A stretch of 64,000 bases of DNA from positions 1 through 64,000 of the IMG/VR virus record IMGVR_UViG_3300024259_000010, one strand, 5' to 3'. Under the pieces are notes generated by a model. That model was not told where the DNA came from. It worked only from the letters and a program-made list of their open reading frames with translations, and searched no databases. Both the position numbers and the translations under genes were made by a program. Numbering within the stretch: the stretch's first letter is position 1; every line of letters begins with the position of its first letter. This document shows positions 5,443 to 47,940 of this stretch, one piece after another.

Positions 5443-5461
5443 ATTCTCTTCTTTAAACTTA

Positions 5462-7070: not shown

Positions 7071-7128
7071 TTTTGATTAATAGTATACCTAGTATATATA
7101 AGTGGATATCTCATGTCTATTATAAGTA

Positions 7129-7136
7129 TATATTAC
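7129..7136 (+). promoter_or_regulatory. phiKZ-type early promoter TATATTAC
   Basis: Exact match to the published phiKZ early promoter consensus; intergenic, upstream of a plus-strand gene; one of 19 copies found. Confidence 0.8.
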
Positions 7137-7181
7137 TTTTTTGTATCAATGAATATAAACTATAATCAAAAGGATATCCGT

Positions 7182-7646: not shown

Positions 7647-7730
7647 ATATGTATGAACAGCCACCATTTAACCATATAAGATTGTCAAATAAATGTTTCA
7701 TAGAACAGGGGTGATTTAAGATAGAAAGTA

Positions 7731-7814
7731 GGCCGCATGGCGGAATGGCAGACGCAACGGTCTTAAAAACCGTTTTCTTCGGAAGTGTGAGTTCGACTCT
7801 CACTGTGGCTACCA
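7731..7814 (+). tRNA. tRNA-Leu(UAA)
   Basis: Acceptor GGCCGCA/TGTGGCT, D arm GCGGAATGGCAGACGC, anticodon arm ACGGT-CTTAAAA-ACCGT, long variable arm, TTCGA T loop, encoded CCA. Confidence 0.95.
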
Positions 7815-7819
7815 ACTAT

Positions 7820-7875
7820 CTTAAAATCTGTCGACTATTGCAGTCGTGTCGGTTCGATTCCGGCCTTGGGTACCA
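7820..7875 (+). pseudogene. Orphan 3' half of a second tRNA-Leu(UAA)
   Basis: CTTAAAA loop, variable arm, T arm GTCGG-TTCGATT-CCGGC, CTTGGGT-A-CCA; no matching 5' half nearby. Confidence 0.75.
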
Positions 7876-7893
7876 AAATGTTATTCTAGTTAA

Positions 7894-8384
7894 GTCGGAG
7901 CGTAACGTTATACATTAATTAGTAGCGATAGGACGCTAAGACAAAACTACGATGAAACTCACAAGCTGATAAACCAGAGTATATTCCTTTCTATGATTTG
8001 GAATGAATTGATACTAGATATGTCTGGTTGTTTTATCTATTACGATGATATCTTAAGATTGATTCGTGATGCATTTATTATAATCCTAAAGGATCTTATG
8101 ATAGATGTAAAGACCTGATCGCAGATCCAAAAGATGGGCGCGATTTGGGCAACCCAGCCAAGAATGCAACTGCTTGGTGTCGTTTGACTTAATAGACGGG
8201 TTATATACGTCATGTGTTGTGGTAACGGTTCTATGGACGCATAGACTGGTCGACGGTGGTTCCGGTTATAACCAAGGATTGAGAGGGAAGATGTGGGTGC
8301 CAATGTTATCAAGGATTATTGCAATACGTTGTAGTGATCAGATATTACGCATCATTCGAACACGCCCCTACCTCGCTCTCCGAC
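7894..8384 (+). ncRNA. Candidate ~490-nt structured ncRNA (RNA-A), family unassigned
   Basis: 5'/3' closing helix, many internal hairpins, terminator directly after; only weak short ORFs overlap. Confidence 0.6.
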
Positions 8385-8391
8385 CTTTTTA

Positions 8392-8428
8392 AATACTTCT
8401 ACCTCAATCGGGTAGGAGTATTCTTTTT
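8392..8428 (+). terminator. Rho-independent terminator
   Basis: TACTTCTACC/GGTAGGAGTA stem plus T-rich tail. Confidence 0.8.
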
Positions 8429-8467
8429 ATATCTGTTATCAAATTAATCAATAAATAAGGAAGAACA

Positions 8468-8725
8468 ATGGCTAAGAAGAAAGAACAAGGACCAAGAATT
8501 TCAGCATGTGGTACACATAAACACATGATCAATGAACGCTTAACTGAAGCTGTTATCAATGAAGGCAAGATCGTATGTAAAGACTCTAAAGGTTTTTATG
8601 TAACTACTGCTCGTGAAATTGATAGTGGTCTTATGGACCCTAATCGTCAGAAGTGTACTCGTGTGCGGGATAATGAACTCGCCGCTGAAGGTATTGTTAT
8701 CGGTACTACTCATAATGCAGATTAA
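8468..8725 (+). CDS. Hypothetical protein
   Basis: 85-aa ORF, AAGGAAG RBS. Confidence 0.75.
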   Translation: MAKKKEQGPRISACGTHKHMINERLTEAVINEGKIVCKDSKGFYVTTAREIDSGLMDPNRQKCTRVRDNELAAEGIVIGTTHNAD

Positions 8726-8843
8726 AGAAGTATGGGATAAATGCGCCCAAGAAGAAAAAGATAAGCTTTTTAAAATAGGATGGTTTTCTTTAATAGGAAT
8801 TCTTATTGCATGTGGTGCACTTGTTATATTTTACAAAGGATAG
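8715..8843 (+). CDS. Small membrane protein (42 aa)
   Basis: ATG 8715; hydrophobic segment GWFSLIGILIACGALVIF. Confidence 0.55.
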   Translation: MQIKEVWDKCAQEEKDKLFKIGWFSLIGILIACGALVIFYKG

Positions 8844-8846
8844 TTT

Positions 8847-9389
8847 ATGAAAATAGAAATACTCACACCATTATTAGTACGCTGTCGCCGATATGGAATC
8901 TCATTTGATTATGGATGGGATGATGAAACTGATACATACAGATTAAAGCTATTCATAAATAAGACTAAAGTATATGATACTGGTCCGACTATGGAAATAG
9001 AAGCTGGTGTGCAGGAAGCTATTAAACGCATTGATAAAGAAAATGAAAATGGTGATCTTAATAACCATACTAATGTTATCGATGCTACTATTAATGTAGA
9101 TAAAGAAGATTCTGAGTTATTCCACAAGATCAAGGAAACTATTGGATTCTTACTTGGTGTACCTGAGAAAAAGATTACATTGAAATCAAGTATCGTAGAA
9201 GATCTTAAAGCTAATTCATTGGATTCAGTTGAATTGATCATGCAGATTGAAGAAGACTTTGGTGTTACTATCTTGGATGAGGACGCTGTTAAAATTAAGA
9301 CAGTGGAAGATATCTATAATTGGGCGGTAGCATATGGCTCACCTAGTTGTCGAGTACTTGCTGTAACTAAGATAACCAAAATAGATTAA
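8847..9389 (+). CDS. Acyl carrier protein domain fused to an unknown N-terminal domain
   Basis: EDLKANSLDSVELIMQIEEDFGVTILDEDAVKIKTVEDI matches the AcpP consensus except DSL is NSL. Confidence 0.85.
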   Translation: MKIEILTPLLVRCRRYGISFDYGWDDETDTYRLKLFINKTKVYDTGPTMEIEAGVQEAIKRIDKENENGDLNNHTNVIDATINVDKEDSELFHKIKETIGFLLGVPEKKITLKSSIVEDLKANSLDSVELIMQIEEDFGVTILDEDAVKIKTVEDIYNWAVAYGSPSCRVLAVTKITKID

Positions 9390-9446
9390 TTAAGAATATG
9401 CAAATCTTGCTTTCAAAAAGTGAGTTTAATAATTTATATCCCTGAG

Positions 9447-9830
9447 TATAATAAGTTGGTTATGCGGATTGCTTGTTTGCGGTCGGCCTGCTTATAACTA
9501 ATTGGGGTATATAAAATCCATGATGTACCGGCGTATCCTTCGGGGTACATTACCCACGTCATGGTCTAGTATATTGATTACTTGTTATTGTAACCCATAC
9601 GAGGGTTATTAGAGTATACGGTATCATGTTGATGATTCCTTGCCTGAAGACGGGCAAGTGGAGACAGTACTAAACAATATGCAAACCAGTAAACAGTCTG
9701 GCAGAACGGGGAGCAACTAGCCCGCCAGATGAGGACCTATACATTATTTATAGGAGGGTCGGGAGCAGTGGCCTTTTAAATCACTATCATGAAAAACAAT
9801 GATAGCACTGCCACCAATTTATTGATTATA
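9447..9830 (+). ncRNA. Candidate ~385-nt structured ncRNA (RNA-B), family unassigned
   Basis: 11-bp closing helix (9450-9460/9813-9823), at least 7 internal stems, no ORF of 60 aa or more on either strand, terminator follows. Confidence 0.65.
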
Positions 9831-9870
9831 AGATACTACTGGATTGTCCAGTAGTATCTTATATATTTTT
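9828..9870 (+). terminator. Long hairpin terminator
   Basis: Perfect 16-bp IR ATAAGATACTACTGGA/TCCAGTAGTATCTTAT plus T-rich tail. Confidence 0.8.
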
Positions 9871-9893
9871 TAAAAATTAAAAAGGAGTATTAT

Positions 9894-10181
9894 ATGAAAT
9901 ATGTAATTGTAAATGATGGATGGGATACAGACCCAGTACCATGTGCTCATGTCTTCTCAGAAGAGATTGGTCACAAAATGGTTGTGGATATGAATACCCA
10001 AGTTATGAGCGCAGGTTTCTGTAATGTAGTGGACGGTCGAATGATTGTTCAAGTTGGTCGTCCTTCTGATTCATTAAATATTGGACCTGCACCTAATGAT
10101 GGAGATCTTCTAACAAAATTAATCCTCCAAGGCAAAGAGCCTATGGATATTGTACGTGAGCGAAGGGATGCTAATGAATAA
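9894..10181 (+). CDS. Hypothetical protein
   Basis: 95-aa ORF, AAGGAG RBS. Confidence 0.8.
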   Translation: MKYVIVNDGWDTDPVPCAHVFSEEIGHKMVVDMNTQVMSAGFCNVVDGRMIVQVGRPSDSLNIGPAPNDGDLLTKLILQGKEPMDIVRERRDANE

Positions 10182-10695
10182 AATAACTAAAATGAAATTA
10201 TGTGTATGGTGGTTCCATCGTGGTCAGAAATATGGTGAGTTGCCATACACATTCCACTTAAATCAATGTTTTGATAGACTACTTGGTTTACACTGTGTAG
10301 ACGTAGATCTACTATGTGCTATGCTTGGTCATGATCTATTTGAAGATACGAAATGTTATTATGCATTTGTTGAAAAACATTTTGGATATCGTGTAGCAGA
10401 GTTGATCAAGGGTATGACTAAGAGTCAAGGAGCTGATTATACGAAGTATGTCAAATCTATTACAAAGAGGACTGAATATCGTAAGGATGTTATGATCCTT
10501 AAAATGATTGATAATATTTGTAACCATACTAATAGTTACATGACTCGTGACCGTAGACGTATGACTAAGTATGAAGGTTCGTTAGGTATATTGCGAGAAA
10601 CATGTGATATGTTATTACATACCAAATCTATATCTGAAATGGATGCGTTACATCAGTTAATAGCGTCTATGGCAGTCCCGACAATTGAGGAATAA
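10174..10695 (+). CDS. HD-domain hydrolase, RelA/SpoT (Mesh1 / small alarmone hydrolase)-like
   Basis: HRGQKYGELPYTFH, GHDLFEDT and KMIDNICN match SpoT-type HD motifs. Confidence 0.8.
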   Translation: MNKITKMKLCVWWFHRGQKYGELPYTFHLNQCFDRLLGLHCVDVDLLCAMLGHDLFEDTKCYYAFVEKHFGYRVAELIKGMTKSQGADYTKYVKSITKRTEYRKDVMILKMIDNICNHTNSYMTRDRRRMTKYEGSLGILRETCDMLLHTKSISEMDALHQLIASMAVPTIEE

Positions 10696-10712
10696 ATTAA
10701 AGAAAGAAAAAT

Positions 10713-10952
10713 ATGAATGATCATGAAATTTTATTAAAACATTATACCATACGTAGAGGTAGTAATGTAATATTCTTTATAATGAATGGTATGTTCACAT
10801 TAGGGTTTGCATATTTATTACCTGCGATAACGGTTGAGTATAATCCAATCACACCATTACCATGTATGCTTGTATGTATATATTTTGGTATAAAGTATAT
10901 ATATACTAATCGTATATGTAAAGAATTAACGAATAAATTAAAAGGAATATAA
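10713..10952 (+). CDS. Membrane protein (2 TM)
   Basis: 79-aa ORF with two hydrophobic segments. Confidence 0.7.
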   Translation: MNDHEILLKHYTIRRGSNVIFFIMNGMFTLGFAYLLPAITVEYNPITPLPCMLVCIYFGIKYIYTNRICKELTNKLKGI

Positions 10953-10953
10953 T

Positions 10954-11358
10954 ATGAAAATTACTGGAGAAATGAAGTCCAAAATAGTATTTGGATTAAT
11001 TATATCAGTATGTGTATTAATTGGAGTATATTGTCTGATCAATATTAATCTCCCATCGAGTGATACTGTTATTTATCGTGTCTCAAACTTGGTAGAAGAA
11101 ACATCACGTGATGTATCATCTACTAGTCGTAAAGAAATTATCGACATGTATGAGATTGAATTAAATAAAGGCATTGCATTAGTTGAAGATATTATTGTCG
11201 AAGAGGAAGTAACCTTCTCTCACCGATGGAGATATAAGAGATTAATGGATAGACTTGAAACAGTTGATAAACTAGATCGACTATATATAGATCTTGCCAG
11301 TATGCAAGAATCAGTTTCTCATTGTAGGATTACGAGGAAACATGTTGAAAAAGAATAA
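10954..11358 (+). CDS. Membrane-anchored hypothetical protein
   Basis: 134-aa ORF with an N-terminal TM segment. Confidence 0.7.
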   Translation: MKITGEMKSKIVFGLIISVCVLIGVYCLININLPSSDTVIYRVSNLVEETSRDVSSTSRKEIIDMYEIELNKGIALVEDIIVEEEVTFSHRWRYKRLMDRLETVDKLDRLYIDLASMQESVSHCRITRKHVEKE

Positions 11359-11476
11359 ACAATCATGTGGTAGATGTGGTGGACAACTACCAAACCGATG
11401 TTATATCAATTAATATCAGATGGTGTCAAGTTCTGTATACCAAAGAAATATAAGTAATTCATTTAGTTTTTAAGTA

Positions 11477-11484
11477 TATATTAC
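11477..11484 (+). promoter_or_regulatory. Early promoter TATATTAC
   Basis: Exact motif, intergenic. Confidence 0.8.
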
Positions 11485-11525
11485 TTTATTGCAATCTGGA
11501 CATAACTTCAGAGGAGGAATAAATT

Positions 11526-11630
11526 ATGAGTAAATTATATGACGATGACCCATTGGACACTACTAATTATACACCATCTGACGATGACCGTCAAGATGAA
11601 CAACAAGATGGCGAAGACGCTTTGGATTAA
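11526..11630 (+). CDS. 34-aa acidic micro-protein MSKLYDDDPLDTTNYTPSDDDRQDEQQDGEDALD
   Basis: Strong GAGGAGG RBS right after the promoter; below the ORF-track cutoff. Confidence 0.65.
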   Translation: MSKLYDDDPLDTTNYTPSDDDRQDEQQDGEDALD

Positions 11631-12497
11631 ACTCGTTTGGGTGAGTATAAACCGATGTGGATCGGACTCTGTAAATCAAACAACAATATGTAAGTCACTA
11701 GTACACGGTATCATTCCAGTGAGTAGGTGGCTATAAACAGTTAGAAATATCTGTAGCTCGAAACTATGAGCAGAGCATATGTTGATGTATGTAAGAGTAG
11801 CTTATTAGGCCCAACAGCGTTGAGAGAAGAGTTACCTACCACTTACCTAGTGGATGGACGAACCTACCAGGTTCAAACTTCTCTCAGGATAAGAATCACC
11901 TATGTTGTGTTATGAACTGCCTGTACCTAATCGGGTGGATTGTAACATAACCTCTAATAACGTCGAAAGACTTGATCTATTATAGATCAACGGGAATAAC
12001 TAAGAGTAGGGGATAAGTCTGCTATAAGGACTCTTAGAAAAACCTGTGTCATCTTGATGCCTTATCGAGATGGTTGTGTGATGCTTTAACCGGGAGACTT
12101 AGAAGGAATATCTATGTCAGATCAGCAAGCGGTTAAGGTTTAAATATAGATGCTCATTAAGCACAAGGTGATAGCTTCATCTATGTGAGCAGTTGGTTAT
12201 TTCAAGAGTTGGAGTTTAGCGAGTTAGCACTTATCGTGTGAGCGTTTGCTCCAACCCTTGACCTATTTTATAAATCTCTTGATCTTTAATAATGATGTGG
12301 TACTTGTATACCAAATGTTTATGTCATTGTTATTGATCGGGCTCCACGTCTACGTCCTTTCATACTACGTAACGTCGGGTTAAGTAAACACAAAAAGAGA
12401 GAGTAAATCCTAGCCCTGGTTAGGTTGAGTCATCAGTGGATATTACAATAAGTTCTAAACATTGTAGTTGTGATATCCTGTTTCGGCACCTGATGAC
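11631..12497 (+). ncRNA. Candidate giant (~870 nt) structured ncRNA (RNA-C), family unassigned
   Basis: At least 15 stems with G-U pairs and nested multi-stem domains; no ORF of 60 aa or more from 11737 to 12590; ends in a terminator. Confidence 0.72.
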
Positions 12498-12526
12498 AAG
12501 AAACTTCTAATAGTTTCTTTTTTTTA
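12498..12526 (+). terminator. Rho-independent terminator
   Basis: AAGAAACT/AGTTTCTT plus poly-T. Confidence 0.75.
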
Positions 12527-12547
12527 ATTTCATGTGTTATTTAGGTA

Positions 12548-12555
12548 TATATTAC
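12548..12555 (+). promoter_or_regulatory. Early promoter TATATTAC
   Basis: Exact motif, intergenic. Confidence 0.8.
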
Positions 12556-12590
12556 TTTTATGAGAAAGCATTTTAAATGAAAGGAATACT

Positions 12591-12923
12591 ATGCGTAGAA
12601 AACATAAACTTAAATTACAAAGAAAATTCTCTATTATAGATAGATTATTATATCGTAAAGTATTTAACTGTAATGATTCCAAATTAGTACTTGTTGATAT
12701 GGTCACCGCATGTATTAAGTATCGTAGTGAAATATTGAAGTTATATAAACTGGCTAAGATACAATGTGATTATGAATTTACTATGGAGCAACCAGAATCT
12801 CTAGAAGGTCTATATAATGAATTATGTTATATATCAGATCGATTTGGATGCATACATCGTATACAATTGATGTTAAATACACCAGAGTACTATGATAATT
12901 TAAACACGATGTTGGAGGAATAA
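12591..12923 (+). CDS. Hypothetical protein
   Basis: 110-aa ORF, AAGGA RBS. Confidence 0.75.
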   Translation: MRRKHKLKLQRKFSIIDRLLYRKVFNCNDSKLVLVDMVTACIKYRSEILKLYKLAKIQCDYEFTMEQPESLEGLYNELCYISDRFGCIHRIQLMLNTPEYYDNLNTMLEE

Positions 12924-12925
12924 CT

Positions 12926-13255
12926 ATGTCATTAGTAACACCATATGTAGATGAGAAAACACAGAAGCTTCATATACTACGATCTCTAATAATGAATTAC
13001 TATGCTGTTGAAGGTCATGGTACAGGTGGTAGTTTACATATTGTACTAGATGATCATAATTACGAACGCACTCATATTAAATTCTGCCTGGATGAGGCTA
13101 AGAAATGTAAAGATCTTATGGGTATTGAAATAGCAACTCGTATGCTTGAGTTCTCTGATGAAGAGAATAAAGTATTGGTAGAAACAGGTTGGGAAATTGA
13201 TGAGTTAATAGGTAGTTCATATAAAGCAGCCTACATCATGGCATATAAGAAATAG
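12926..13255 (+). CDS. Phage hypothetical protein (GGSLHIVLDD motif)
   Basis: 109-aa ORF, GGAGG RBS. Confidence 0.75.
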   Translation: MSLVTPYVDEKTQKLHILRSLIMNYYAVEGHGTGGSLHIVLDDHNYERTHIKFCLDEAKKCKDLMGIEIATRMLEFSDEENKVLVETGWEIDELIGSSYKAAYIMAYKK

Positions 13256-13269
13256 AAAGTATTGAATAG

Positions 13270-13773
13270 ATGGAAATAAAGATACACTACGATTTTACAG
13301 ATGGTACTGAACTTAGTTATGTAGAAGGTCTTGAAGCTATTGATTTAAATCTAAGCTTTACTACTAACTGCTTTGAGTTCTTTACCTCTGATAGATCATG
13401 TGAAGTGATTGTAGAGAAAGCCAGTGGTCGTTATATATCTATGCAGGAAGTTCTTGCTAATGATAATTTTTATACACGTAAGCATATTCGTAAGGCACAT
13501 AACCTACGCAAGATGTTAGTAGCTGGTGGTTTTAAATGGAAGGGTGATATAATTTCCCCTAACCAACAGATGATAAATACTATAGACCCTCTTATACTTA
13601 ATCAGTTTAACGATACAGAAGGACGTGGATTGAAAGACCATGAGATTGGTGCATTGGTAAATGTATTATCTATACATCTTAGTAAGTATATTAAGTTGGG
13701 TTTCTTACGAGAAGCTATATCAACTGTAACTAAGAAGTTTCTTAATGACACAGGACTTAGATATAACAATTAA
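13270..13773 (+). CDS. Phage hypothetical protein
   Basis: 167-aa ORF. Confidence 0.75.
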   Translation: MEIKIHYDFTDGTELSYVEGLEAIDLNLSFTTNCFEFFTSDRSCEVIVEKASGRYISMQEVLANDNFYTRKHIRKAHNLRKMLVAGGFKWKGDIISPNQQMINTIDPLILNQFNDTEGRGLKDHEIGALVNVLSIHLSKYIKLGFLREAISTVTKKFLNDTGLRYNN

Positions 13774-13784
13774 AGGAAACACCA

Positions 13785-14372
13785 ATGATACAAAGTATTA
13801 CATTTGCAAAGGAACTCTTTTGTTTCAAAGTAGGAGATTCATATGACTTCAAACCATTAACATTATTGGTCGGAGATCAAGGGTGTGGTAAAAGCACTAT
13901 ACTGAATCTATTGGGTAAGCAAGGTATGTATGGTAGTACGCAAATGGTAAACATTGAAGTTGGTAAGAATGACAATGGTTTCATTCACCATGATTTTGAA
14001 ATGGCTAGTCATCGTACTAATACTAGCGGACCAAATCCATACTCACCTGATTACAATGACCAGTTGATTAGAATGATTGATTCTAAGTCTATGTCTCACG
14101 GTGAAGCCACTAAGGTTTCCTTTGAAGATTTTGATAGAATTGAAACAGATATTCTTATATTGGATGAACCCGATATGTCACTGTCTATGCGAAGTGTACA
14201 TATGTTAGTGGAACATGTTAAACGATGGATTGATTCAGGTAAGCAAGTTATCTTGAGTTGTCATCATCCGTATCTTATAGAAGCTTTTGATGAAGTATTA
14301 TCCTTGGAACATAAACAATGGATGTCATCTAAAGAATTTATAGAATCACATAATTTAAAGATGGACCTGTAG
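13785..14372 (+). CDS. ABC/AAA-type ATPase
   Basis: Walker A GDQGCGKS, signature-like SHGE, Walker B ILILDEP, H-loop SCHH. Confidence 0.88.
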   Translation: MIQSITFAKELFCFKVGDSYDFKPLTLLVGDQGCGKSTILNLLGKQGMYGSTQMVNIEVGKNDNGFIHHDFEMASHRTNTSGPNPYSPDYNDQLIRMIDSKSMSHGEATKVSFEDFDRIETDILILDEPDMSLSMRSVHMLVEHVKRWIDSGKQVILSCHHPYLIEAFDEVLSLEHKQWMSSKEFIESHNLKMDL

Positions 14373-14439
14373 CTCAGTTGGTCAGAGCAGGACACTCATA
14401 ATGTCTTGGTCGGGGGTTCAAGTCCCTCCGGGTCCACCA
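14363..14439 (+). tRNA. tRNA-Ile2(CAU) (lysidine type; elongator Met not excluded)
   Basis: Acceptor GGACCTG/CGGGTCC, anticodon arm GGACA-CTCATAA-TGTCT, overall pattern like E. coli ileX, encoded CCA. Confidence 0.9.
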
Positions 14440-14632
14440 ACTTTTAGACAACACTAAGTATCGGCGAGAGAACGGTGTGGGGGAACAACACTATATAAGT
14501 GCCCTCTGTCTATTTCAATTTTATTGATAATACTAATCCAAACTTCAAATATATAAAAAAGAGAGATAGGGTTAGGTTACATGAAACGAAAGGTATAAAA
14601 CTAAATCAATAAATAGAAACAAAGGAAACAAC

Positions 14633-14935
14633 ATGAGCGAACAAACAAAGAAATACCCACGACATCATATCACACTCAGCGACGGATCTTTATTATCATT
14701 ATCTGTTAATAAGAATCCGATACCTGATTGGGAACATATTGTGGAGGCATTTCCTAAAATCGTAAATACTGTAACTTTGGGAGAACTTGTCAAGAGGATT
14801 GATGATATCAATACCGACACGGTAGAGTATCACAATACTATTGATGAGGCTACTGATAAGTTCACTGGTGCAGGTGAAGAATATTACCTGTACACTGATT
14901 CATGTGATCGTCAACAACGCGTTGACGTGAGTTAA
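14633..14935 (+). CDS. Hypothetical protein
   Basis: 100-aa ORF, AAGGA RBS. Confidence 0.75.
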   Translation: MSEQTKKYPRHHITLSDGSLLSLSVNKNPIPDWEHIVEAFPKIVNTVTLGELVKRIDDINTDTVEYHNTIDEATDKFTGAGEEYYLYTDSCDRQQRVDVS

Positions 14936-14942
14936 TCAAAAC

Positions 14943-14976
14943 GTAGTCACTCTCCCTTAATTGGGAGAGTGACTAC
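14943..14976 (+). terminator. 14-bp hairpin, probable terminator
   Basis: GTAGTCACTCTCCC/GGGAGAGTGACTAC. Confidence 0.6.
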
Positions 14977-15001
14977 ACCTATTTAATCGAATGGAGATAT
15001 T

Positions 15002-15262
15002 ATGTTAGAAGACGGATTGGGTATACGAATACTAGATAATCCATTCACTGGTAAGAAAATAATAAGTATACCAAAGAGTAGGCAAAGAGCCAAACGCATA
15101 AATGCAATATATATGTGTGAGCGTGCTATTATAATGGGTGGACATTCTTATTATGTAAATGCTTATACAGCTATGCAAGAAGCGGGTATGCAAAAGTGGC
15201 CGTTTACAGAACAAGAAGAAAATGAACTTTTAGAAAGAGATCAAATAAAGGCAAATATATGA
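15002..15262 (+). CDS. Hypothetical protein
   Basis: 86-aa ORF, GGAG RBS. Confidence 0.75.
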   Translation: MLEDGLGIRILDNPFTGKKIISIPKSRQRAKRINAIYMCERAIIMGGHSYYVNAYTAMQEAGMQKWPFTEQEENELLERDQIKANI

Positions 15263-15357
15263 AAAAGAAAATAGAAAGTAAAATTATTCCTGATAATAAA
15301 ATGCCAACAACTGATAAATCTGAAGACGAAGAAGAAGAAAAATAAGGGAGTATTAAT

Positions 15358-15498
15358 ATGTGTAAAGTAGATGATGGTAGAAAAGATGATGACTGTCGAA
15401 CATGTGGTGATGACAAAAGTAATAACTATACAAGCCAGTCTGGTAATAGTGTCTGTGGTTGCGGCACTCCAAGTCACACAGATAGTAAAGGTAAATAA
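15358..15498 (+). CDS. Small Cys-rich protein (46 aa)
   Basis: GGGAG RBS; contains CRTC and CGCG. Confidence 0.55.
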   Translation: MCKVDDGRKDDDCRTCGDDKSNNYTSQSGNSVCGCGTPSHTDSKGK

Positions 15499-15501
15499 GT
15501 T

Positions 15502-15681
15502 ATGGCAACAAATCCAGTAGGTAAGGGAACAAAGACGATTGGTTTGAATATGTCTAAGAAGATGGCAACGACTCTTGAGAAACGAGCTGCTTCTATGCAT
15601 ATCTCCACCAGTAAGTACTGTAAGATAATCTTACAGCAATGGATCGACTCTGGTAAAAAGTTGACCCTTAAAGAAGATTAG
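15502..15681 (+). CDS. Ribbon-helix-helix-like DNA-binding protein (59 aa)
   Basis: MATNPVGKGTKTIGLNMSKKMATTLEKRAASMHISTSKYCKIILQQWIDSGKKLTLKED shows the RHH strand-helix-helix pattern. Confidence 0.7.
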   Translation: MATNPVGKGTKTIGLNMSKKMATTLEKRAASMHISTSKYCKIILQQWIDSGKKLTLKED

Positions 15682-15693
15682 CTTCTATGATAT

Positions 15694-15719
15694 AGGCACC
15701 TTCGGGTGCCTTATTTTTT
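15694..15719 (+). terminator. Rho-independent terminator
   Basis: GGCACC-TTCG-GGTGCC plus T tract. Confidence 0.85.
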
Positions 15720-15755
15720 CACACATACTATCTATTATATAAATAGGAGATTATT

Positions 15756-16121
15756 ATGGAAGACAATGAATATTTATATCATTACAACGCAGTGGTAACG
15801 GGTGTCTACGATGGTGACACTATTACGGTAGATATAGATCTAGGAATGGACACGTGGCGTAAAGGTGAGAAAATTAGATTAGCTAGAATCAATACACCTG
15901 AAGTTAGAGGTAAAGAACGACCTGAAGGAATTAAATCTAGAGATTGGTTACGCAAACGTATTCTTGGGCGACATATCATGCTTGAAACCAAGCGTGATAA
16001 GAAAGGCAAGTACGGTCGGTACATTGCGGAGATCTGGGTACATGAAGAAGATCTTGCTACCTTCATTAATATTAACGATGAGTTAGTAATTGAGAAACTA
16101 GCAGAGTACGTTGAATATTAG
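15756..16121 (+). CDS. Thermonuclease (SNase-like)
   Basis: VYDGDTITV, IRLARINTPE, DKKGKYGRYIAEI. Confidence 0.88.
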   Translation: MEDNEYLYHYNAVVTGVYDGDTITVDIDLGMDTWRKGEKIRLARINTPEVRGKERPEGIKSRDWLRKRILGRHIMLETKRDKKGKYGRYIAEIWVHEEDLATFININDELVIEKLAEYVEY

Positions 16122-16133
16122 AAAAGAGAATTT

Positions 16134-16346
16134 ATGCAAAGAAAAGTCCTTACAATCGGTGGGTTTTGTACTAACAAAACTTGTCCTTTCTGTGGTGGAG
16201 ACCCAGTGGTCATAACCGGTGATAATAAGAAGAAACATATTGAATGTATAAACAGACATGGATCATGTCCTATGAACATGCGAACTAAGAAACATAAGTT
16301 AGAACGTGAGTGTCGTAAGGAATGGAACACGAGATTTTACCCGTAG
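16134..16346 (+). CDS. Lar-like restriction alleviation / Zn-ribbon protein
   Basis: CPFCGG...C...C...WNTR pattern. Confidence 0.6.
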   Translation: MQRKVLTIGGFCTNKTCPFCGGDPVVITGDNKKKHIECINRHGSCPMNMRTKKHKLERECRKEWNTRFYP

Positions 16347-16480
16347 TCTATATAACGACTTTATAAATGCAGGAGTGTAAGTTGATCCTTATTACCTCTG
16401 AATTTCTACAAACATATAACACTTCGGTTATATGGTTATATGGACTACGACTTTTTAATAAAAAGTTATATAGGAAGTCA

Positions 16481-17041
16481 ATGGATAAAAAAGAATTATT
16501 TAACAGTAATGGATATAGAGGGAAAAAAGGTAATGATAAAACATTGGACCAATTCTGTAATAATATTATTGGTTTAATAGGACATGATATTACGGTATTA
16601 GAGGTTGGATCTTACATGGGTCATTCCGCAGCTTATTTTGATAAATACTTTAGCTTTGTGTTTTGTGTAGACCCATGGTTTCATCCTAAAAACCAATATA
16701 ATAACCGTCATATACAATTAGCAGAAGAGATCTTTGATGATAGGATCACTCCAACTATTATAAAATGTAAAGGTCTATCTGAAGATATTGTCAAGGAATT
16801 TTCTGACAATTCCATTGATCTGATATATATTGATGCACAGCATGACTATGAATCAGTTACTCAAGACATTGGTTTATGGCTTACAAAATTAAAGAAAAAT
16901 GGAATAATGAGTGGGCATGATTATAATTTCTATCATAAAGATGTGGTCCGTGCTGTAGATGAATGCTTTGGAGTACCAACAGTATTACATGGTCATAATT
17001 GGCTTATTGTCGATCCTCATAGTAAATATAAAAAACTTTAA
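16481..17041 (+). CDS. Class I SAM-dependent methyltransferase (Methyltransf_24-like)
   Basis: VLEVGSYMGHS, IDLIYIDAQHDYESV, GIMSGHDY. Confidence 0.88.
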   Translation: MDKKELFNSNGYRGKKGNDKTLDQFCNNIIGLIGHDITVLEVGSYMGHSAAYFDKYFSFVFCVDPWFHPKNQYNNRHIQLAEEIFDDRITPTIIKCKGLSEDIVKEFSDNSIDLIYIDAQHDYESVTQDIGLWLTKLKKNGIMSGHDYNFYHKDVVRAVDECFGVPTVLHGHNWLIVDPHSKYKKL

Positions 17042-17123
17042 GGCACACGGATAAGGGTTGAGCATTTAAAAGGACAGAGCTGAAATAGGCCGACCAACCA
17101 AACTCCGTATTAATTAAAATAGT

Positions 17124-17168
17124 AATATACTACACTCCCTATTACGGGGAGTGTAGTATATTTTTTTA
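17124..17168. terminator. Bidirectional terminator hairpin at a convergent junction
   Basis: 16-bp IR between convergent genes; loop ATTAC is the reverse complement of the GTAAT loop of the other copies. Confidence 0.8.
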
Positions 17169-18035
17169 TTACAGCGCTGCTGCTAAGATAAATAATTGTT
17201 CCAACTCTTCTTGAGTTTTACCTAATACTTGTCTAATAGACTCAACTAGAGGATTACCAAGATTAACTTCTTGTTTATATTCCCATTGAGTTAATGCGAT
17301 TTCACGTTCAACTACATCTTCAATAGAAGTAATAGCAGTAGTAACATCTGATGGCATAATACCAATCTGAATGAGACCAAGTCTAAACTGTACCATAGAT
17401 ACTACTTGAGGAATATACACATGTTCAATTTCTTCAGCAATAACATTCTTTTGTCCAGGTGAAGTAATACCGTTGTACAATTCTACATCTTCAGCATACA
17501 AAGCCACAATACGTTCATGTTGACCCTGCGACACTCCCTGTTTCTCAACTGGGGTAGGCAAACTAACTAATTCAATATCATCAGAAAAATCTAAATCAGT
17601 TTTTAATTGACCAAGATCTTCTGGGAATTTGTATAGACCAATCGATCCGCTTTCTAAATAATCAGACTGCTTTTCGAATGCCTTATGTTCTGGTTCAAAT
17701 GATGCTTCCAGTGTATCGAGTACAGTATTGATATCTTCAATGCCATATTCGGCACATGCTGATAAGAAGCGATCCACTGGATTACGAACCAACATAATGG
17801 TAGAAGATGCATTTTCCTTTTCAATAGTTGGACACATCCATTGTACACGTGTATTGCCAAGAGTTTTACCCTCTGGTAGATGAAGCCCACCTGAAGGCTT
17901 TGGATTGTAAATCTTTTCACTAATTACTGGATGAAATGATTTGATGATAGCTCTTGCAATTGTTTCAGATCCCGATTTAGGATTAAGAATAACTGCGACA
18001 TTATTTGCATTTAAATATATTTTTTCCATTTTCAT
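17169..18035 (-). CDS. Sulfotransferase-like domain fused to a C-terminal phage tail-associated domain
   Basis: 5'PSB-like NPKSGS, 3'PB-like VRNPVDRFLSA; C-terminal PQVVSMVQFRLGL...WEY...LEQLFILAAAL domain. Confidence 0.7.
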   Translation of the reverse strand: MKMEKIYLNANNVAVILNPKSGSETIARAIIKSFHPVISEKIYNPKPSGGLHLPEGKTLGNTRVQWMCPTIEKENASSTIMLVRNPVDRFLSACAEYGIEDINTVLDTLEASFEPEHKAFEKQSDYLESGSIGLYKFPEDLGQLKTDLDFSDDIELVSLPTPVEKQGVSQGQHERIVALYAEDVELYNGITSPGQKNVIAEEIEHVYIPQVVSMVQFRLGLIQIGIMPSDVTTAITSIEDVVEREIALTQWEYKQEVNLGNPLVESIRQVLGKTQEELEQLFILAAAL

Positions 18036-18041
18036 TTACCT

Positions 18042-19010
18042 CTAATTAGTTACTTCCCAACCCTTATTTTGGGCTATAGTTACATCACATCCTGCAGACC
18101 CTGGATTGTTCATAATTTGTAGTTTACCATTTCCATAGTCTCCACCTAATGATACAGCATCTGGAAGATCGTCCATTAGTTGATTAAGTGTATCAATGTC
18201 CAATCCGTTACCGTTTAAATATACAGCAATTACATAACCAGATCCGTTAGATACATTACCAATCGCTACTACATCAGTTAGACTTACTGATGTAAGATTG
18301 GGACAATTACTTATATTCACCCCTTGTACTTCTGTAATATTGCTAATTGTAATAGATTCTAGATTGGCATTATCTTGGACATTAAAATGGTTGACTATAT
18401 TTTTATCTGACAATTCTAGTTCCGTTATTGCATTACAGTAGCGAATCTCTATATATTCCATATCAGTAGGCAACTCACTAAAATCAATAGTTTCCAAGTT
18501 CTCACATTGTAGTTTAATAAAATCGAGAGACTCTTGTCCAGAAAGATCGATATTGGATAATGCACCTGTTGTTATTAAGTCTAATGATTCCAATGGTATA
18601 GTATTGATATGCAACTCAGATATACTCATGGCAGATATTTCTAATTTTGTGATAACATCTGCTTGGACAAGGTTTGCTGCATCTAAAGCATAAATATACA
18701 ATGGCTGTGCTGTTAAGCCATAAGCACTGTCTAGCGAAGCGCTGTGTATTTGCTGCCCATCCACATCGGTAACAACACCCTTGTATTCATATGCTAATGA
18801 ACCAGCGGTGGTGTTTTTAAATATATAATCTACGCTCGTCGGTTCGACATATCTACCTGCAATGATTTTGATTACGTTAGGTGGTGGTAAAGATGATGCT
18901 CCACCTCCACCGCCTCCACCAGGTGCTTCTTCTGATAGTACTTCAACTCCTGCTATCTTTACTTTGGCTCCTTGTTCCATCTCAAGGTCACCGCTTATTT
19001 TCATAGTCAT
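18042..19010 (-). CDS. Leucine-rich-repeat protein, probably virion/tail-associated
   Basis: LxxLxLxxN/C repeats and a poly-Gly linker; on the late-gene strand. Confidence 0.7.
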   Translation of the reverse strand: MTMKISGDLEMEQGAKVKIAGVEVLSEEAPGGGGGGGASSLPPPNVIKIIAGRYVEPTSVDYIFKNTTAGSLAYEYKGVVTDVDGQQIHSASLDSAYGLTAQPLYIYALDAANLVQADVITKLEISAMSISELHINTIPLESLDLITTGALSNIDLSGQESLDFIKLQCENLETIDFSELPTDMEYIEIRYCNAITELELSDKNIVNHFNVQDNANLESITISNITEVQGVNISNCPNLTSVSLTDVVAIGNVSNGSGYVIAVYLNGNGLDIDTLNQLMDDLPDAVSLGGDYGNGKLQIMNNPGSAGCDVTIAQNKGWEVTN

Positions 19011-19057
19011 GATATTATTCTTTCTTTTAAATTAATATTTTAGTTAATAAGTTATGA

Positions 19058-19354
19058 TTAGTCTTCTGTCCACAACACCTGTTCTACCCAGTTGGTAGTA
19101 GATGCTTTAAACACTTGGAGACTAACACCATTGGTAACAGATACCAAGCGAGCAGCTTCTCCAATGTATACGGTAACAGTATCACCTGATTTAGTGGAAG
19201 TAATACCACTTGTAACAAGACGACCAGTATGAGCGCTAACTACTGGAACGTCATTGGGTTTAAGTGCAACCCCTTTAACGTTACGAACCTGTGCATAAGC
19301 ACCGATAGCAATAGAGCAAATTAATAATGTGAATAATCTAATTTTCTTCTTCAT
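19058..19354 (-). CDS. Signal-peptide protein, paralog of 47943-48722
   Basis: MKKKIRLFTLLICSIAIGAYA signal; shared PVVSAHTGRL motif. Confidence 0.75.
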   Translation of the reverse strand: MKKKIRLFTLLICSIAIGAYAQVRNVKGVALKPNDVPVVSAHTGRLVTSGITSTKSGDTVTVYIGEAARLVSVTNGVSLQVFKASTTNWVEQVLWTED

Positions 19355-19422
19355 AGTTATATCCTTTTCTTTTTAATGAACCTACATATAATGTTTGGCG
19401 ATATCGATATAAATTATAAGTA

Positions 19423-19430
19423 TATATTAC
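19423..19430 (+). promoter_or_regulatory. Early promoter TATATTAC
   Basis: Exact motif, intergenic. Confidence 0.8.
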
Positions 19431-19469
19431 TTAACTGGTATATGAATTTAAAACTAACTAAGGAATAAT

Positions 19470-20150
19470 ATGGAAAATAAAATAGATTCAGTTGTAACAT
19501 TTGAAGAGATTCGTGAAACGTTTTCAAACTTCTTACCAGATAATACAATCCTTGTTTTAACAGGTTTAGCATTTGATGATGAAGGTGGTATGTACCCATG
19601 TATATCAACCACTGTTAATATCAAACTTCATCGTGTTATGATCAAAGCTTTATATGAACAGAAAATGAATGAAGATGAACTTCGATTATGGGAAGAGTTC
19701 AGTATTGGCATATCAAAAGATGGTGGTAAGATTGAATATGATGCTAGTAAATTAAATGAATATCTCGACACTGTTAGCTCACAATTAGTATATCGTATAT
19801 TTGTTATATCTGAAAATGGGGCAACAGTTATATTTGAAAACATGAAGAAGGAATTACTACCGAGTGTTTATAAAATACTAGAAGAACATATGGATAGAAA
19901 TGAATATAGTTTTACACAAGTTGGTAATATCAATGAGCAGATAAATGAAGTCAAAACAGAAGAAGATAAAATTCTAGAGGATACAATTGTAGGGATTGCA
20001 AATACTACTGAAGATCTTGAGTTCCAATCTTTCTGTCAAGAAACATTACGATCTGATAATCCAAAAGAACACTTGGTTAATCATTACACAGAAGGTATTA
20101 ATAAAGAATGGTGTTTAGAGATGTGTCCTACTCTAGATGAACATGTTTAA
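19470..20150 (+). CDS. Hypothetical acidic protein
   Basis: 226-aa ORF, AAGGA RBS. Confidence 0.8.
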   Translation: MENKIDSVVTFEEIRETFSNFLPDNTILVLTGLAFDDEGGMYPCISTTVNIKLHRVMIKALYEQKMNEDELRLWEEFSIGISKDGGKIEYDASKLNEYLDTVSSQLVYRIFVISENGATVIFENMKKELLPSVYKILEEHMDRNEYSFTQVGNINEQINEVKTEEDKILEDTIVGIANTTEDLEFQSFCQETLRSDNPKEHLVNHYTEGINKEWCLEMCPTLDEHV

Positions 20151-20163
20151 ATAAGGAGAAGAT

Positions 20164-20349
20164 ATGTTACAATATTTACTTTTATCATTAGCATTGGTAA
20201 GTCTCGTATACCAATTCTATTTCACATTTGTATCAGTTCACATGAAACGTTATATGAATCATTGGAACATGGGTTCTGTCTTAGTAGTATTAGGATGGGT
20301 TGTTTGGGGAATCGTAAACATTAAAGTGATAGAGGTATGTTGGCCATGA
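20164..20349 (+). CDS. Small membrane protein
   Basis: 61 aa, 2 TM segments, AAGGAG RBS. Confidence 0.7.
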   Translation: MLQYLLLSLALVSLVYQFYFTFVSVHMKRYMNHWNMGSVLVVLGWVVWGIVNIKVIEVCWP

Positions 20350-20906
20350 GTAAAACAAATCATGTACAGAAAGAAATATTGAGTGGTAACACTGGTCCTA
20401 TAATGTTTCCATGTCTTGAGATAATTGACACAAAGGAATCATTTGATCTGCCTAAACCCAAAAATTCTGGTGTAACAATATCACCAGAAGAATTGTTCCA
20501 ATGGTTATTATCATTTAAGTTTACTATTAGTATTGATAAAGATAATACAAGTTGTATAAATTCTGATATGGTATATGGTAGATATGTACCAGAAGGAATA
20601 TGCCCTAATGATAAAGTAGCAATTGATAAGTACTTCAAATCTATAGAACATATTACGTATCACTTCAAGGATACAGTGATGCGGTTATATGATAGTGTAT
20701 TAAACAGGGTCATTAAAGAATGTGAATTTCAGATCATGGATCAGCGTATGTTATACTACATTGTAGATCAGTTTAAACACTTTGAGCGTATGTTGGAAAT
20801 TGAACATCGTGTAAATGTAGTACAGTGGTTAGAGATTAATTATGGTAGATTGTCATCATGGAACCCAAAGCCAAATAATATTGAGATTGATGTAATTTAT
20901 AATTAA
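20346..20906 (+). CDS. Hypothetical protein
   Basis: ATG overlaps the upstream stop (ATGA). Confidence 0.75.
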   Translation: MSKTNHVQKEILSGNTGPIMFPCLEIIDTKESFDLPKPKNSGVTISPEELFQWLLSFKFTISIDKDNTSCINSDMVYGRYVPEGICPNDKVAIDKYFKSIEHITYHFKDTVMRLYDSVLNRVIKECEFQIMDQRMLYYIVDQFKHFERMLEIEHRVNVVQWLEINYGRLSSWNPKPNNIEIDVIYN

Positions 20907-20933
20907 TAGTTCTCGATAATTATATAGACTTTT

Positions 20934-21198
20934 GATTTATAATGTGCGTTAGGTGGATAGTGAGTTCGATAAACAACCGCCCGCACGTGTGTATCCGGCA
21001 CAACACCTAGAGTTTGAAATAATAACTCGTTCCTGTACCATATTACGAAATGTATATGGTGGGCTAGTACGAAACCTTATTGAGAATTCAGTAAGGCCAG
21101 ATACCAGTAAAGCATGGAAATGGGGGTACTATAAACGTATCAGTTAAACGGATAGTGGAAGGTTGCCTAAGGGTAGTAATCCCACCGCATTATAAATC
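20934..21198 (+). ncRNA. Candidate ~265-nt structured ncRNA (RNA-D), family unassigned
   Basis: Perfect 11-bp closing helix plus a second helix GGTGG/CCACC; at least 4 internal hairpins. Confidence 0.65.
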
Positions 21199-21219
21199 AG
21201 ATTATGTAATGGAGAAATT

Positions 21220-21435: not shown

Positions 21436-21463
21436 TAAATAGAATGTATTGCGAAAGTATAAT

Positions 21464-21769: not shown

Positions 21770-21789
21770 ACAATAAGGAAACAAAAACT

Positions 21790-47894: not shown

Positions 47895-47940
47895 AATATA
47901 AGATACTACACCGTAATGGTGTAGTATCTTATATTTTTTT
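47895..47940. terminator. Bidirectional terminator hairpin at a convergent junction
   Basis: 18-bp IR with GTAAT loop. Confidence 0.85.

What the first reader, a model, noticed from the sequence alone, without database searches (positions are those of the whole stretch)
7731..21198. Candidate system: a phage repertoire of several unrelated large structured RNAs
Within 14 kb there are four largely ORF-free folded regions (about 490, 385, 870 and 265 nt). Three have 5' and 3' ends that pair into a closing helix, and three end at an intrinsic terminator. They lie among tRNAs, a half-tRNA, an ACP and an alarmone hydrolase. Elsewhere the window adds a tmRNA and a tRNA-like RNA. I see no sequence similarity between them, so they are not simple repeats. 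Closing helices are typical of stable processed RNAs such as RNase P, 6S and tRNA. Inference: an RNA toolkit for host takeover, such as decoys for RNA-sensing defences, scaffolds, or translation control in a compartment-forming phage.
Basis: partly seen in the sequence, partly recalled or inferred. Interest (0 to 1): 0.85.

Follow-up and report, generated by a model that had tools for sequence, protein, structure and literature searches.

The report
One convincing orphan phage RNA, three doubtful
A phiKZ-like jumbo phage has a stretch of about 5 kb that is half non-coding; one ~870-nt region folds like a real, strand-specific structured RNA made early in infection, but the claimed four-RNA "toolkit" is not supported and no relatives exist to prove any structure.

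Summary
The four ORF-free regions are real: A 7878-8432, B 9390-9875, C 11631-12530, D 20907-21219. All six frames carry TAA, TAG and TGA. There is no codon periodicity and no Rfam, Pfam or PHROG hit. Window 7647-12590 is 52% non-coding against 12% elsewhere.

The evidence for folding is very uneven.
- C (~870 nt) is strong: z -6.1 on the + strand against -1.5 on the antisense, better than the window's own tmRNA (-4.0). It forms its own unit: phiKZ-type early promoter, 34-codon acidic ORF, C, terminator. It also carries a local cluster of ACCUA motifs.
- B (~370-430 nt) is marginal but strand-specific (z -2.3 against -0.6).
- A looks like coding-sequence controls once its terminator is removed.
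- D has an unstructured interior (z -0.26). Its only signal is a ~30-bp long-range stem that pairs the sequence just after the upstream stop codon with the Shine-Dalgarno of the next gene.

The phage is IMG/VR UViG_3300024259_000010. Only near-identical copies were found, so covariation could not be tested.

Verdict: one good and one possible new orphan structured RNA, comparable in kind to GOLLD and ROOL but not members of those families. A coordinated system is unsupported.

The parts
7126..7138 (+). phiKZ-type early promoter motif GTATATATTACTT. It heads the unit: gene (about 7197-7646), tRNA-Leu, tRNA half, region A, terminator.
   Evidence: There are 28 matches in the window against 8.2 expected. 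The flanks align. The phiKZ early promoter core is TATATTAC (PMC7058600).
7731..7814 (+). tRNA-Leu(UAA)
   Evidence: ARAGORN; Rfam tRNA at 55.6 bits.
7832..7877 (+). Truncated tRNA: anticodon-arm-like hairpin, T arm, 3' acceptor strand and CCA. No 5' half is present.
   Evidence: Exact GGTTCGATTCC at 7851-7861. Fold. No ACCCAAG 5' strand nearby. 79% identical to the T-arm region of tRNA-Arg.
7878..8391 (+). Region A: the ORF-free trailer of the tRNA transcript. No structure signal beyond background.
   Evidence: z -1.2 to -1.4 on the + strand and -0.95 on the - strand. Period-3 power 1.6. ORF pieces score like spurious ORFs and have no family hits.
8392..8430 (+). Intrinsic terminator ending A
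   Evidence: 13-bp stem followed by a T-run.
9390..9826 (+). Region B: a possible ~370-430-nt structured RNA, or a 3' UTR of the 85-aa/42-aa/ACP operon.
   Evidence: z -2.3 on the + strand against -0.6 on the - strand. GC 0.43 at 9500-9800. 12-bp closing helix 9449-9460/9813-9824, P 0.83, dependent on context. No Rfam hit.
9827..9870 (+). Intrinsic terminator ending B
   Evidence: 17-bp stem followed by a T-run.
11474..11486 (+). Early promoter motif of the C transcription unit
   Evidence: Exact motif.
11526..11630 (+). 34-codon, very acidic ORF with a GGAGGA Shine-Dalgarno, immediately upstream of C.
   Evidence: Called as a gene on three independent contigs. Codon score 0.69 bits per codon, in the range of real genes.
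11631..12497 (+). Region C: a ~870-nt structured RNA candidate made of about 10 independently folding hairpin or junction domains.
   Evidence: z -6.1 on the + strand against -1.5 on the antisense. Thirds: -1.7, -4.8, -4.3. 294 pairs, 41 of them G-U. Period-3 power 0.44. No Rfam hit.
11834..11929 (+). Cluster of five ACCUA motifs inside a three-way junction plus a long hairpin
   Evidence: 6 copies in C against 0.71 expected. Positions. The 141-nt module has z -4.0, with 0 of 200 shuffles as good.
12498..12527 (+). Terminator of the C unit, followed at once by the next early promoter (12545)
   Evidence: 8-bp stem, P 0.94, then T8. Promoter.
20907..21219 (+). Region D: a 313-nt spacer inside an early operon. 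A long interrupted stem encloses an unstructured ~240 nt.
   Evidence: Stem segments: 20910-20914/21212-21216 (P 0.92), 20919-20927/21202-21210 (P 0.82), 20931-20946/21186-21201 (P 0.91). Interior z -0.26. Whole region z -2.5 on the + strand and -2.3 on the - strand.
21211..21216 (+). Shine-Dalgarno GGAGAA of gene 21220-21435. It is paired in the D stem with UUCUC at 20910-20914, which lies 4 nt after the upstream stop codon.
   Evidence: Sequence; pair probability 0.92.
14363..14439 (+). tRNA-Met(CAU), context only

Best explanation
The window is the early, accessory end of an uncultured phiKZ-like jumbo phage. The four regions are four different things, not one system.

(1) C is a real, strand-specific structured non-coding RNA. 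It is transcribed from a phiKZ-type early promoter, behind a 34-codon acidic ORF, and stops at an intrinsic terminator. The transcript is about 1.0 kb. Its last ~870 nt form a string of stable hairpin and junction domains, one of which displays several ACCUA motifs. I infer that it acts as an RNA in trans, most likely as a multivalent binding platform (a sponge or decoy) for a host or phage RNA-binding factor or RNase early in infection. It resembles GOLLD and ROOL in kind but is not homologous to them.

(2) B is a weaker candidate of the same sort, or a structured 3' UTR of the ACP operon.

(3) D is not an autonomous folded RNA. It is a cis element: a ~30-bp long-range stem pairs the sequence just after the upstream stop codon with the Shine-Dalgarno of the next gene. 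Translation of that gene would then depend on ribosomes finishing the upstream gene.

(4) A is the unremarkable trailer of a tRNA transcript, next to a decayed tRNA.

Shown: the regions are non-coding, the promoter and terminator anatomy, and the folding statistics. Inferred: that the regions are transcribed, that the RNAs are stable, and every functional statement.
For: - Non-coding: stops of all three kinds in all six frames. Period-3 power is 0.4-1.6 against a mean of 8.2 in coding sequence. ORF pieces in A-C score like spurious ORFs and have no Pfam or PHROG hits.
- Long, GC-enriched gaps: A-C are 37-39% GC, against 27-33% in most other gaps; the tmRNA gap is 40%. The segment is 52% non-coding against 12% elsewhere.
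- C: MFE -257 kcal/mol, z -6.1, against z -1.5 on the antisense strand. The middle and 3' thirds score -4.8 and -4.3, with 0 of 100 shuffles as good. 41 of 294 pairs are G-U, and many helices have P above 0.9. It beats the tmRNA control at -4.0.
- Transcription unit of C: exact early promoter motif at 11474 and the next one at 12545; the motif contains the phiKZ core TATATTAC. The 34-aa ORF looks coding.
- ACCUA cluster.
- B: z -2.3 on the + strand against -0.6 on the - strand.
- D: stem probabilities 0.82-0.92 with the Shine-Dalgarno included, and an interior z of -0.26.
- A: z -1.2 to -1.4, the same as coding controls.
- Context precedent: GOLLD and ROOL are phage or prophage RNAs near tRNA islands.
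Against: - No homologue of any region was found, so there is no covariation support. All structure is single-sequence prediction.
- No expression data exist.
- In a noisy sliding scan, some coding windows also reached z below -4.
- C is predicted as beads on a string, with few confident long-range helices. A fortuitous run of hairpins in fast-evolving spacer DNA is therefore not excluded.
- The ACCUA enrichment is only marginal after correcting for all pentamers.
- B's z-score varied from -1.4 to -2.6 between shuffle sets.
- D's stem is equally stable on the antisense strand, so a DNA-level inverted repeat is not excluded. Its 64-codon GTG ORF has an ambiguous codon score of 0.13.
- A relative at 40% identity in the neighbouring giant protein does not keep this gene neighbourhood.
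Confidence: 0.5

Rival explanations
1. All four regions are functionless spacer: decayed genes or tRNAs and recombination scars in a hypervariable early region. The predicted folds are incidental.
For: - A truncated tRNA sits at 7832-7877.
- The neighbourhood is not conserved in the nearest relative.
- The flanking ACP and HD genes have no close homologues.
- A and the interior of D fold like background.
Against: - C's z of -6.1 with strong strand asymmetry is hard to obtain by decay.
- No residual codon periodicity or protein similarity remains.
- Relaxed ARAGORN finds no excess of tRNA-like remnants.
- The regions are GC-enriched like the tmRNA gap.
- C has its own promoter and terminator.
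Confidence: 0.22
2. The regions are cis-acting untranslated regions. B and C would be long 3' UTRs that stabilise or regulate their own mRNAs (the ACP operon and the 34-aa ORF). D would be a leader for the next gene.
For: - None has a promoter of its own separate from an upstream ORF.
- D's stem covers the downstream Shine-Dalgarno.
- B and C end at the operon terminator.
Against: A terminator hairpin alone protects a 3' end, so 400-870 nt of extra structure behind a 34-codon ORF is out of proportion. No complementarity to other phage transcripts in the window exceeds chance.
Confidence: 0.15
3. One reading: the four RNAs form a coordinated toolkit for host takeover (decoys, scaffolds, translation control) in a compartment-forming phage.
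For: - The regions cluster within 14 kb among tRNAs in an early region.
- The phage is distantly phiKZ-like.
Against: - The four regions lie in separate transcription units.
- They share no motif or similarity.
- Two of the four show no structure signal.
- No co-occurrence data are possible.
Confidence: 0.05
4. DNA-level elements. D would be a miniature inverted-repeat insertion. C or B would be an origin, packaging or recombination site built of palindromes.
For: - D is flanked by a perfect 12-bp inverted repeat, 16 bp if G-U pairs are allowed.
- D's z-score is the same on both strands.
Against: - D is single-copy in the window and in IMG/VR, and no target-site duplication is visible.
- C and B are strongly strand-asymmetric, with many G-U pairs.
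- C has no iterons or repeats.
Confidence: 0.05
5. C or B is a very divergent GOLLD, ROOL, group I intron or other catalogued RNA that the models missed.
For: Size and tRNA-rich phage context match GOLLD and ROOL.
Against: No Rfam 15 hit, even at E up to 10 with relaxed filters on short slices. Flanking ORFs are complete, so nothing would be spliced.
Confidence: 0.03

Closest known systems
[quoted passage not shown]
   Same: It is phage- or prophage-encoded and often lies next to tRNA genes. One marine example lies downstream of a Met-tRNA. It is about 800 nt or longer, and its function is unknown. C is ~870 nt in a phage region that carries tRNAs.
   Different: There is no match to the Rfam model at any threshold tried. 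C is predicted as serial local domains rather than a multi-pseudoknot fold. Nothing is known about oligomerisation.
ROOL RNA (Rumen-Originating, Ornate, Large)
   Same: It is a phage or prophage RNA near tRNA islands, about 580 nt long, with no known protein partner. B and A are of similar size and context.
   Different: There is no model match. B's structure signal is marginal and A's is absent.
Small RNAs mapped in phiKZ and 201phi2-1
   Same: They come from the same broad phage group with the same early-promoter logic. Transcription units without a coding sequence, and sRNAs next to tRNAs, have been reported there.
   Different: Those RNAs were selected as under 250 nt and are mostly derived from 5' UTRs. 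Nothing of 400-900 nt is described in those papers.
Multivalent sponge RNAs such as CsrB/RsmZ (from general knowledge)
   Same: They are strings of hairpins that present a short repeated motif in loops. C has five ACCUA motifs within 96 nt, several of them in or beside loops.
   Different: The motif differs: GGA is not enriched (13 against 12.8 expected). The partner is unknown, and only part of C carries the motif.
Long-range stems that mask a ribosome-binding site and couple translation of neighbouring genes, as in RNA phage MS2 (from general knowledge)
   Same: D's stem pairs the nucleotides just after the upstream stop codon with the next gene's Shine-Dalgarno.
   Different: Here the two strands are ~270 nt apart, around an apparently unstructured insert. 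Coupling has not been tested.

Membership tests
GOLLD RNA | Match to the family covariance model (conserved 3' domain) | tested here: not met
   No hit at gathering score, or at E up to 10 on 11450-12560 and 7000-22000.
GOLLD RNA | Phage or prophage location near tRNA genes; length about 800 nt | tested here: met
   The contig is an IMG/VR jumbo phage. tRNAs lie at 7731 and 14363. C is ~870 nt.
GOLLD / ROOL | Homo-oligomeric RNA nanocage | not testable with these tools
   Needs native gels, SEC-MALS or cryo-EM.
ROOL RNA | Match to the family covariance model (six multistem junctions, three pseudoknots) | tested here: not met
   No hit.
Group I / group II intron | Model match, and interruption of a gene whose exons rejoin | tested here: not met
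   No Rfam hit. Flanking ORFs have their own stops, starts, terminators and promoters.
tRNA gene array or its remnants | tRNA-like cloverleaf segments | tested here: not met
   ARAGORN at 85% and 75% thresholds shows no excess in A-D. Only the 3' half at 7832-7877 is present.
Protein-coding or recently degraded gene | Open frame, codon periodicity, codon usage, similarity of the pieces to proteins | tested here: not met
   D's 64-codon GTG ORF remains ambiguous: codon score 0.13, no Shine-Dalgarno, no homologue, and not present in the protein database even as itself.
Conserved structured RNA in general | Compensatory base changes among homologues | not testable with these tools
   Only copies 99.94-100% identical were found, with no differences inside A-C. 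No other relative was found.
Miniature inverted-repeat element (region D) | Terminal inverted repeats plus multiple copies and a target-site duplication | tested here: not met
   Inverted repeats are present. D is single-copy, and no duplication is visible.
CsrB-type sponge RNA | Many GGA motifs in hairpin loops | tested here: not met
   GGA occurs 13 times against 12.8 expected. A different motif, ACCUA, is locally clustered.

The most novel reading that the evidence does not exclude
C founds a new class of ~0.9-kb phage structured RNA. The virion RNA polymerase of a phiKZ-like jumbo phage would make it in the first minutes of infection. Its array of ACCUA-presenting hairpins would titrate a host RNA-binding protein, RNase or RNA-sensing defence. 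B would be a second, unrelated class in the same accessory island.
Probability: 0.15. Interest if true: 0.7.

Novelty: new member of a known kind. Interest (0 to 1): 0.4.

Why it matters
Very few bacterial or phage non-coding RNAs exceed 500 nt. The two phage-borne ones, GOLLD and ROOL, turned out to build RNA-only nanocages whose purpose is still unknown.

A third, unrelated large RNA would be a useful handle on what such RNAs do. It sits in a phiKZ-like phage and is tied to an early promoter. In that group only RNAs under 250 nt were reported in the papers read here.

As it stands, the case rests on one sequence and on folding statistics. It is a lead for transcript mapping and probing, not a discovery. 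The practical value of this check is to narrow four claimed RNAs to one good and one possible candidate, and to give D a simpler, testable cis-regulatory reading.

Tried and rejected
- **Stop-codon recoding.** Rejected: all three stop codons occur in all six frames.
- **Degraded genes.** No periodicity, spurious-like codon scores, and no Pfam or PHROG hits for nine stop-free pieces. The D ORF has no homologue.
- **Hidden small ORFs with a Shine-Dalgarno.** None is convincing.
- **Known RNA families.** Five Rfam searches, three of them on short slices with relaxed filters, found only the tRNAs and the tmRNA.
- **tRNA remnants.** Relaxed ARAGORN shows no excess.
- **Repeats or similarity between the regions.** Only promoter and terminator elements are shared.
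- **Antisense targets in the window.** Nothing exceeds chance.
- **Homologue hunting, all negative:**
  - GenBank phages by megablast and blastn.
  - ACP neighbour: only itself among 5.8 billion proteins.
  - HD neighbour: best hit 32% identity.
  - Giant-protein relatives at 51% and 40% identity sit on short contigs that do not keep the neighbourhood.
  - An IMG/VR scan with an alignment of that protein found only itself.
  - Exact 18-27-mers of B, C and D in IMG/VR found only themselves.
  - A C 18-mer in JGI metagenomes found itself plus five mutually homologous contigs with no other similarity to C.
  - A B 27-mer in 185,579 genomes found nothing.
  - An ACCUA-spacing pattern gave 117 or more loci, none matching a covariance model of the 141-nt C module.
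- **Sliding-window z-scan.** Too slow and too noisy with 15 shuffles; stopped at 14.3 kb.

Full report
**Source and context.** The window is the first 64 kb of IMG/VR contig UViG_3300024259_000010 (235.8 kb). The same phage occurs in four samples. The two further copies that could be read are nearly identical: an ENA contig at 99.94% and a Logan contig at 100%. No GenBank phage matches at the DNA level. A 1023-aa virion protein is 23-27% identical to proteins of large Serratia, Klebsiella, Ralstonia, Vibrio, Erwinia and Pseudomonas phages of 270-320 kb. A 13-nt motif, GTATATATTACTT, occurs 28 times with up to two mismatches, against 8.2 expected. Nearly all copies are on the + strand, just after a T-run and 35-50 nt before a ribosome-binding site. 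It contains TATATTAC, the published early-promoter core of phiKZ and 201phi2-1 (PMC7058600). So this is the early, rightward-transcribed accessory region of a distant phiKZ-like jumbo phage.

**The observation.** Four stretches lack ORFs: A 7878-8432, B 9390-9875, C 11631-12530 and D 20907-21219.
- Each has TAA, TAG and TGA in all six frames, so a reassigned stop codon cannot explain them.
- Period-3 spectral power is 0.4-1.6, like the tmRNA at 1.5. Fifteen genes have a mean of 8.2.
- The longest stop-free pieces in A-C have codon scores like spurious ORFs: -0.36 to -0.08 bits per codon, except one 41-codon piece in A at +0.24. The null is -0.23 ± 0.19 and real small genes score +0.08 to +0.66.
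- Nine pieces have no Pfam or PHROG match at E up to 1.
- Window 7647-12590 is 52% non-coding against 12% for the rest. The four regions are among the seven longest gaps in the window, and two of the other three hold the tmRNA and tRNA-Arg.
- GC is 37-39% in A-C. Most other gaps are 27-33%, and the tmRNA gap is 40%.
- The stated neighbours are all there: tRNA-Leu, tRNA-Met, a tRNA 3' half, an ACP and an HD_4-type phosphohydrolase.
- The regions share no similarity.

**Transcription anatomy** (sequence).
- A: promoter at 7126, a gene, tRNA-Leu, the tRNA half, A, then the terminator at 8392-8430.
- B follows the 85-aa, 42-aa and ACP genes and ends at the terminator at 9827-9870. No early motif precedes it.
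- C: promoter at 11474, a 34-codon acidic ORF with a strong Shine-Dalgarno (codon score 0.69), C, the terminator at 12498-12527, and immediately the next promoter at 12545.
- D lies inside an operon that starts at promoter 19420. It has neither promoter nor terminator.

These are four separate settings, not one locus.

**Is it folded more than chance?** With terminators included, z-scores looked good for all four (-3.0, -5.2, -6.0, -2.6). Much of that signal is the terminator hairpin. Without terminators:
- A scores -1.2 to -1.4 on the + strand and -0.95 on the - strand. This is the same as twelve coding controls, which range from +0.2 to -2.4.
- B scores -1.4 to -2.6 across shuffle sets. The best estimate is -2.3 from 100 shuffles, against -0.6 on the antisense.
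- C scores -6.1 against -1.5 on the antisense, a difference of 57 kcal/mol. Its middle and 3' thirds score -4.8 and -4.3, with none of 100 shuffles as stable.
- The phage's own tmRNA scores -4.0.

C has 294 predicted pairs, 41 of them G-U. It has about ten domains whose helices have probability above 0.9, but few confident long-range helices. The strand asymmetry argues for selection on the RNA rather than on DNA palindromes.

**Region D.** D's interior (20947-21185) has z -0.26. Its whole signal is a three-segment stem:
- 20910-20914 with 21212-21216
- 20919-20927 with 21202-21210
- 20931-20946 with 21186-21201

The pair probabilities are 0.82-0.92. The outermost segment pairs UUCUC, 4 nt after the upstream stop codon, with GAGAA of the Shine-Dalgarno GGAGAA of gene 21220. 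That is the geometry of translational coupling through a masking stem. The stem is as stable on the antisense strand. D is single-copy. A 64-codon GTG ORF inside it is ambiguous (codon score 0.13). It has no Shine-Dalgarno, and it has no match in the protein database, not even to itself.

**Closing helices.** They are confirmed for D. B has a 12-bp helix, 9449-9460 with 9813-9824 (P 0.83), but it disappears when folding starts at 9391. C's is weak (4 bp, P 0.56), and A has none.

**A feature inside C.** The pentamer ACCUA occurs six times in C against 0.71 expected. Five copies lie within 11834-11929. The enclosing 141 nt fold into a three-way junction plus a long hairpin (z -4.0, 0 of 200 shuffles as good). 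Several copies lie in or beside loops. This suggests a multivalent recognition array. After correction for all pentamers the enrichment is only marginal, and GGA is not enriched.

**Known families.** Rfam 15 returns only the tRNAs and the tmRNA, at gathering scores and at E up to 10 on short slices. GOLLD, ROOL, group I and II introns, RNase P, 6S and the like therefore gave no hit above chance level (best E about 0.6-0.8). Relaxed ARAGORN shows no buried tRNAs. No antisense complementarity to the rest of the window exceeds chance.

**Relatives.** None is usable.
- The ACP has no homologue but itself, and the HD protein's best hit is 32% identical.
- The giant protein next door has relatives at 51% and 40% identity on 8-11-kb contigs. 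The one that extends this way does not keep the neighbouring genes and has no tRNA.
- IMG/VR holds no other relative.
- Exact-pattern scans of IMG/VR, JGI metagenomes and 185,579 genomes found only the phage itself. One 18-mer also hit five mutually homologous contigs with no other similarity to C.
- A motif-spacing scan followed by a covariance model of the C module found nothing.
- The eleven differences between the two long copies all lie outside A-C.

Covariation, the standard proof of RNA structure, could therefore not be tested.

**Interpretation.**
- C is most likely a real structured non-coding RNA made early. I commit, with modest confidence, to a trans-acting binding-platform (sponge or decoy) role, because of its serial-hairpin architecture, motif cluster and early promoter.
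- B may be a second such RNA or a structured 3' UTR.
- D is best read as a cis-acting coupling stem around an insert.
- A is an ordinary trailer beside a decayed tRNA.

In kind, C resembles GOLLD and ROOL: large phage RNAs near tRNA genes with unknown function. It fails their membership test. In the phiKZ and 201phi2-1 transcriptome papers read here, only RNAs under 250 nt were reported.

**Verdict.** Interest is moderate.

Noticed in passing
window, 28 sites, e.g. 7126, 11474, 12545, 19420, 34864, 51312, 51836, 58702: The phage-specific promoter motif GTATATATTACTT contains the phiKZ early core TATATTAC. It has a conserved upstream TTCAT...TTATAA context and usually follows a terminator T-run directly. 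It marks this whole window as early and presumably dependent on the virion RNA polymerase.
   Followed up: partly
window 7832-7877: A truncated tRNA: anticodon-arm-like hairpin, perfect T arm, 3' acceptor strand and CCA, with no 5' half. It starts 18 nt after tRNA-Leu, and its T-arm region is 79% identical to that of tRNA-Arg at 39822. It looks like a deletion remnant, though it could still act as an RNase P/Z or CCA-adding signal.
   Followed up: partly
window 11526-11630: A 34-codon ORF for a very acidic peptide (MSKLYDDDPLDTTNYTPSDDDRQDEQQDGEDALD) with a strong Shine-Dalgarno and gene-like codon usage. It is the only coding sequence in the ~1-kb early transcript that carries RNA C.
   Followed up: partly
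window 11834-11929: Five ACCUA motifs lie within 96 nt of RNA C, several in predicted loops. The partner is unknown.
   Followed up: partly
window 54816-55217: A 402-nt gap with very strong predicted structure on both strands (z -5.1 and -6.4). It includes a 39-nt near-perfect palindrome, and a two-mismatch copy of the promoter motif lies at 55105. It looks like a bidirectional terminator or a DNA-level palindrome rather than an RNA gene.
   Followed up: no
window 15028-15091 (inside gene 15002-15262): Ten of the eleven differences between this contig and the ENA copy fall within 64 nt of one 86-aa gene, yet change only two residues (IIS I to IES T). No template-like repeat occurs in the window. 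This may be a recombination patch or a local hypervariable spot.
   Followed up: partly
L010, L012-L015 (JGI metagenome contigs): An 18-19-nt stretch of RNA C (GCCTGTACCTAATCGGGTG) is identical to part of a repeated element on five contigs from other metagenomes. Those contigs are homologous to one another over at least 160 nt but unrelated to the phage. This looks like a chance match to a multi-copy family.
   Followed up: yes
window 52880-53308: A phage-encoded tmRNA (Rfam 100 bits) with the tag GTKVINFPSARALAA. It served here as the positive control for the folding statistics.
   Followed up: no
window 1-5472 (- strand), continuing beyond the window: A giant protein of about 2628-2695 aa with no recorded Pfam domain. 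It has relatives at 51% and 40% identity on short metagenome contigs. More distant 2100-3200-aa relatives at 22-27% identity include some with lytic transglycosylase (PF01464) or chitinase-type (PF00182) domains, and one is named a virion structural protein.
   Followed up: partly
window 9827-9870 and 47896-47933: The terminator hairpin that ends region B shares 13-14-nt arms with another hairpin near 47.9 kb, so the same terminator sequence is reused.
   Followed up: no
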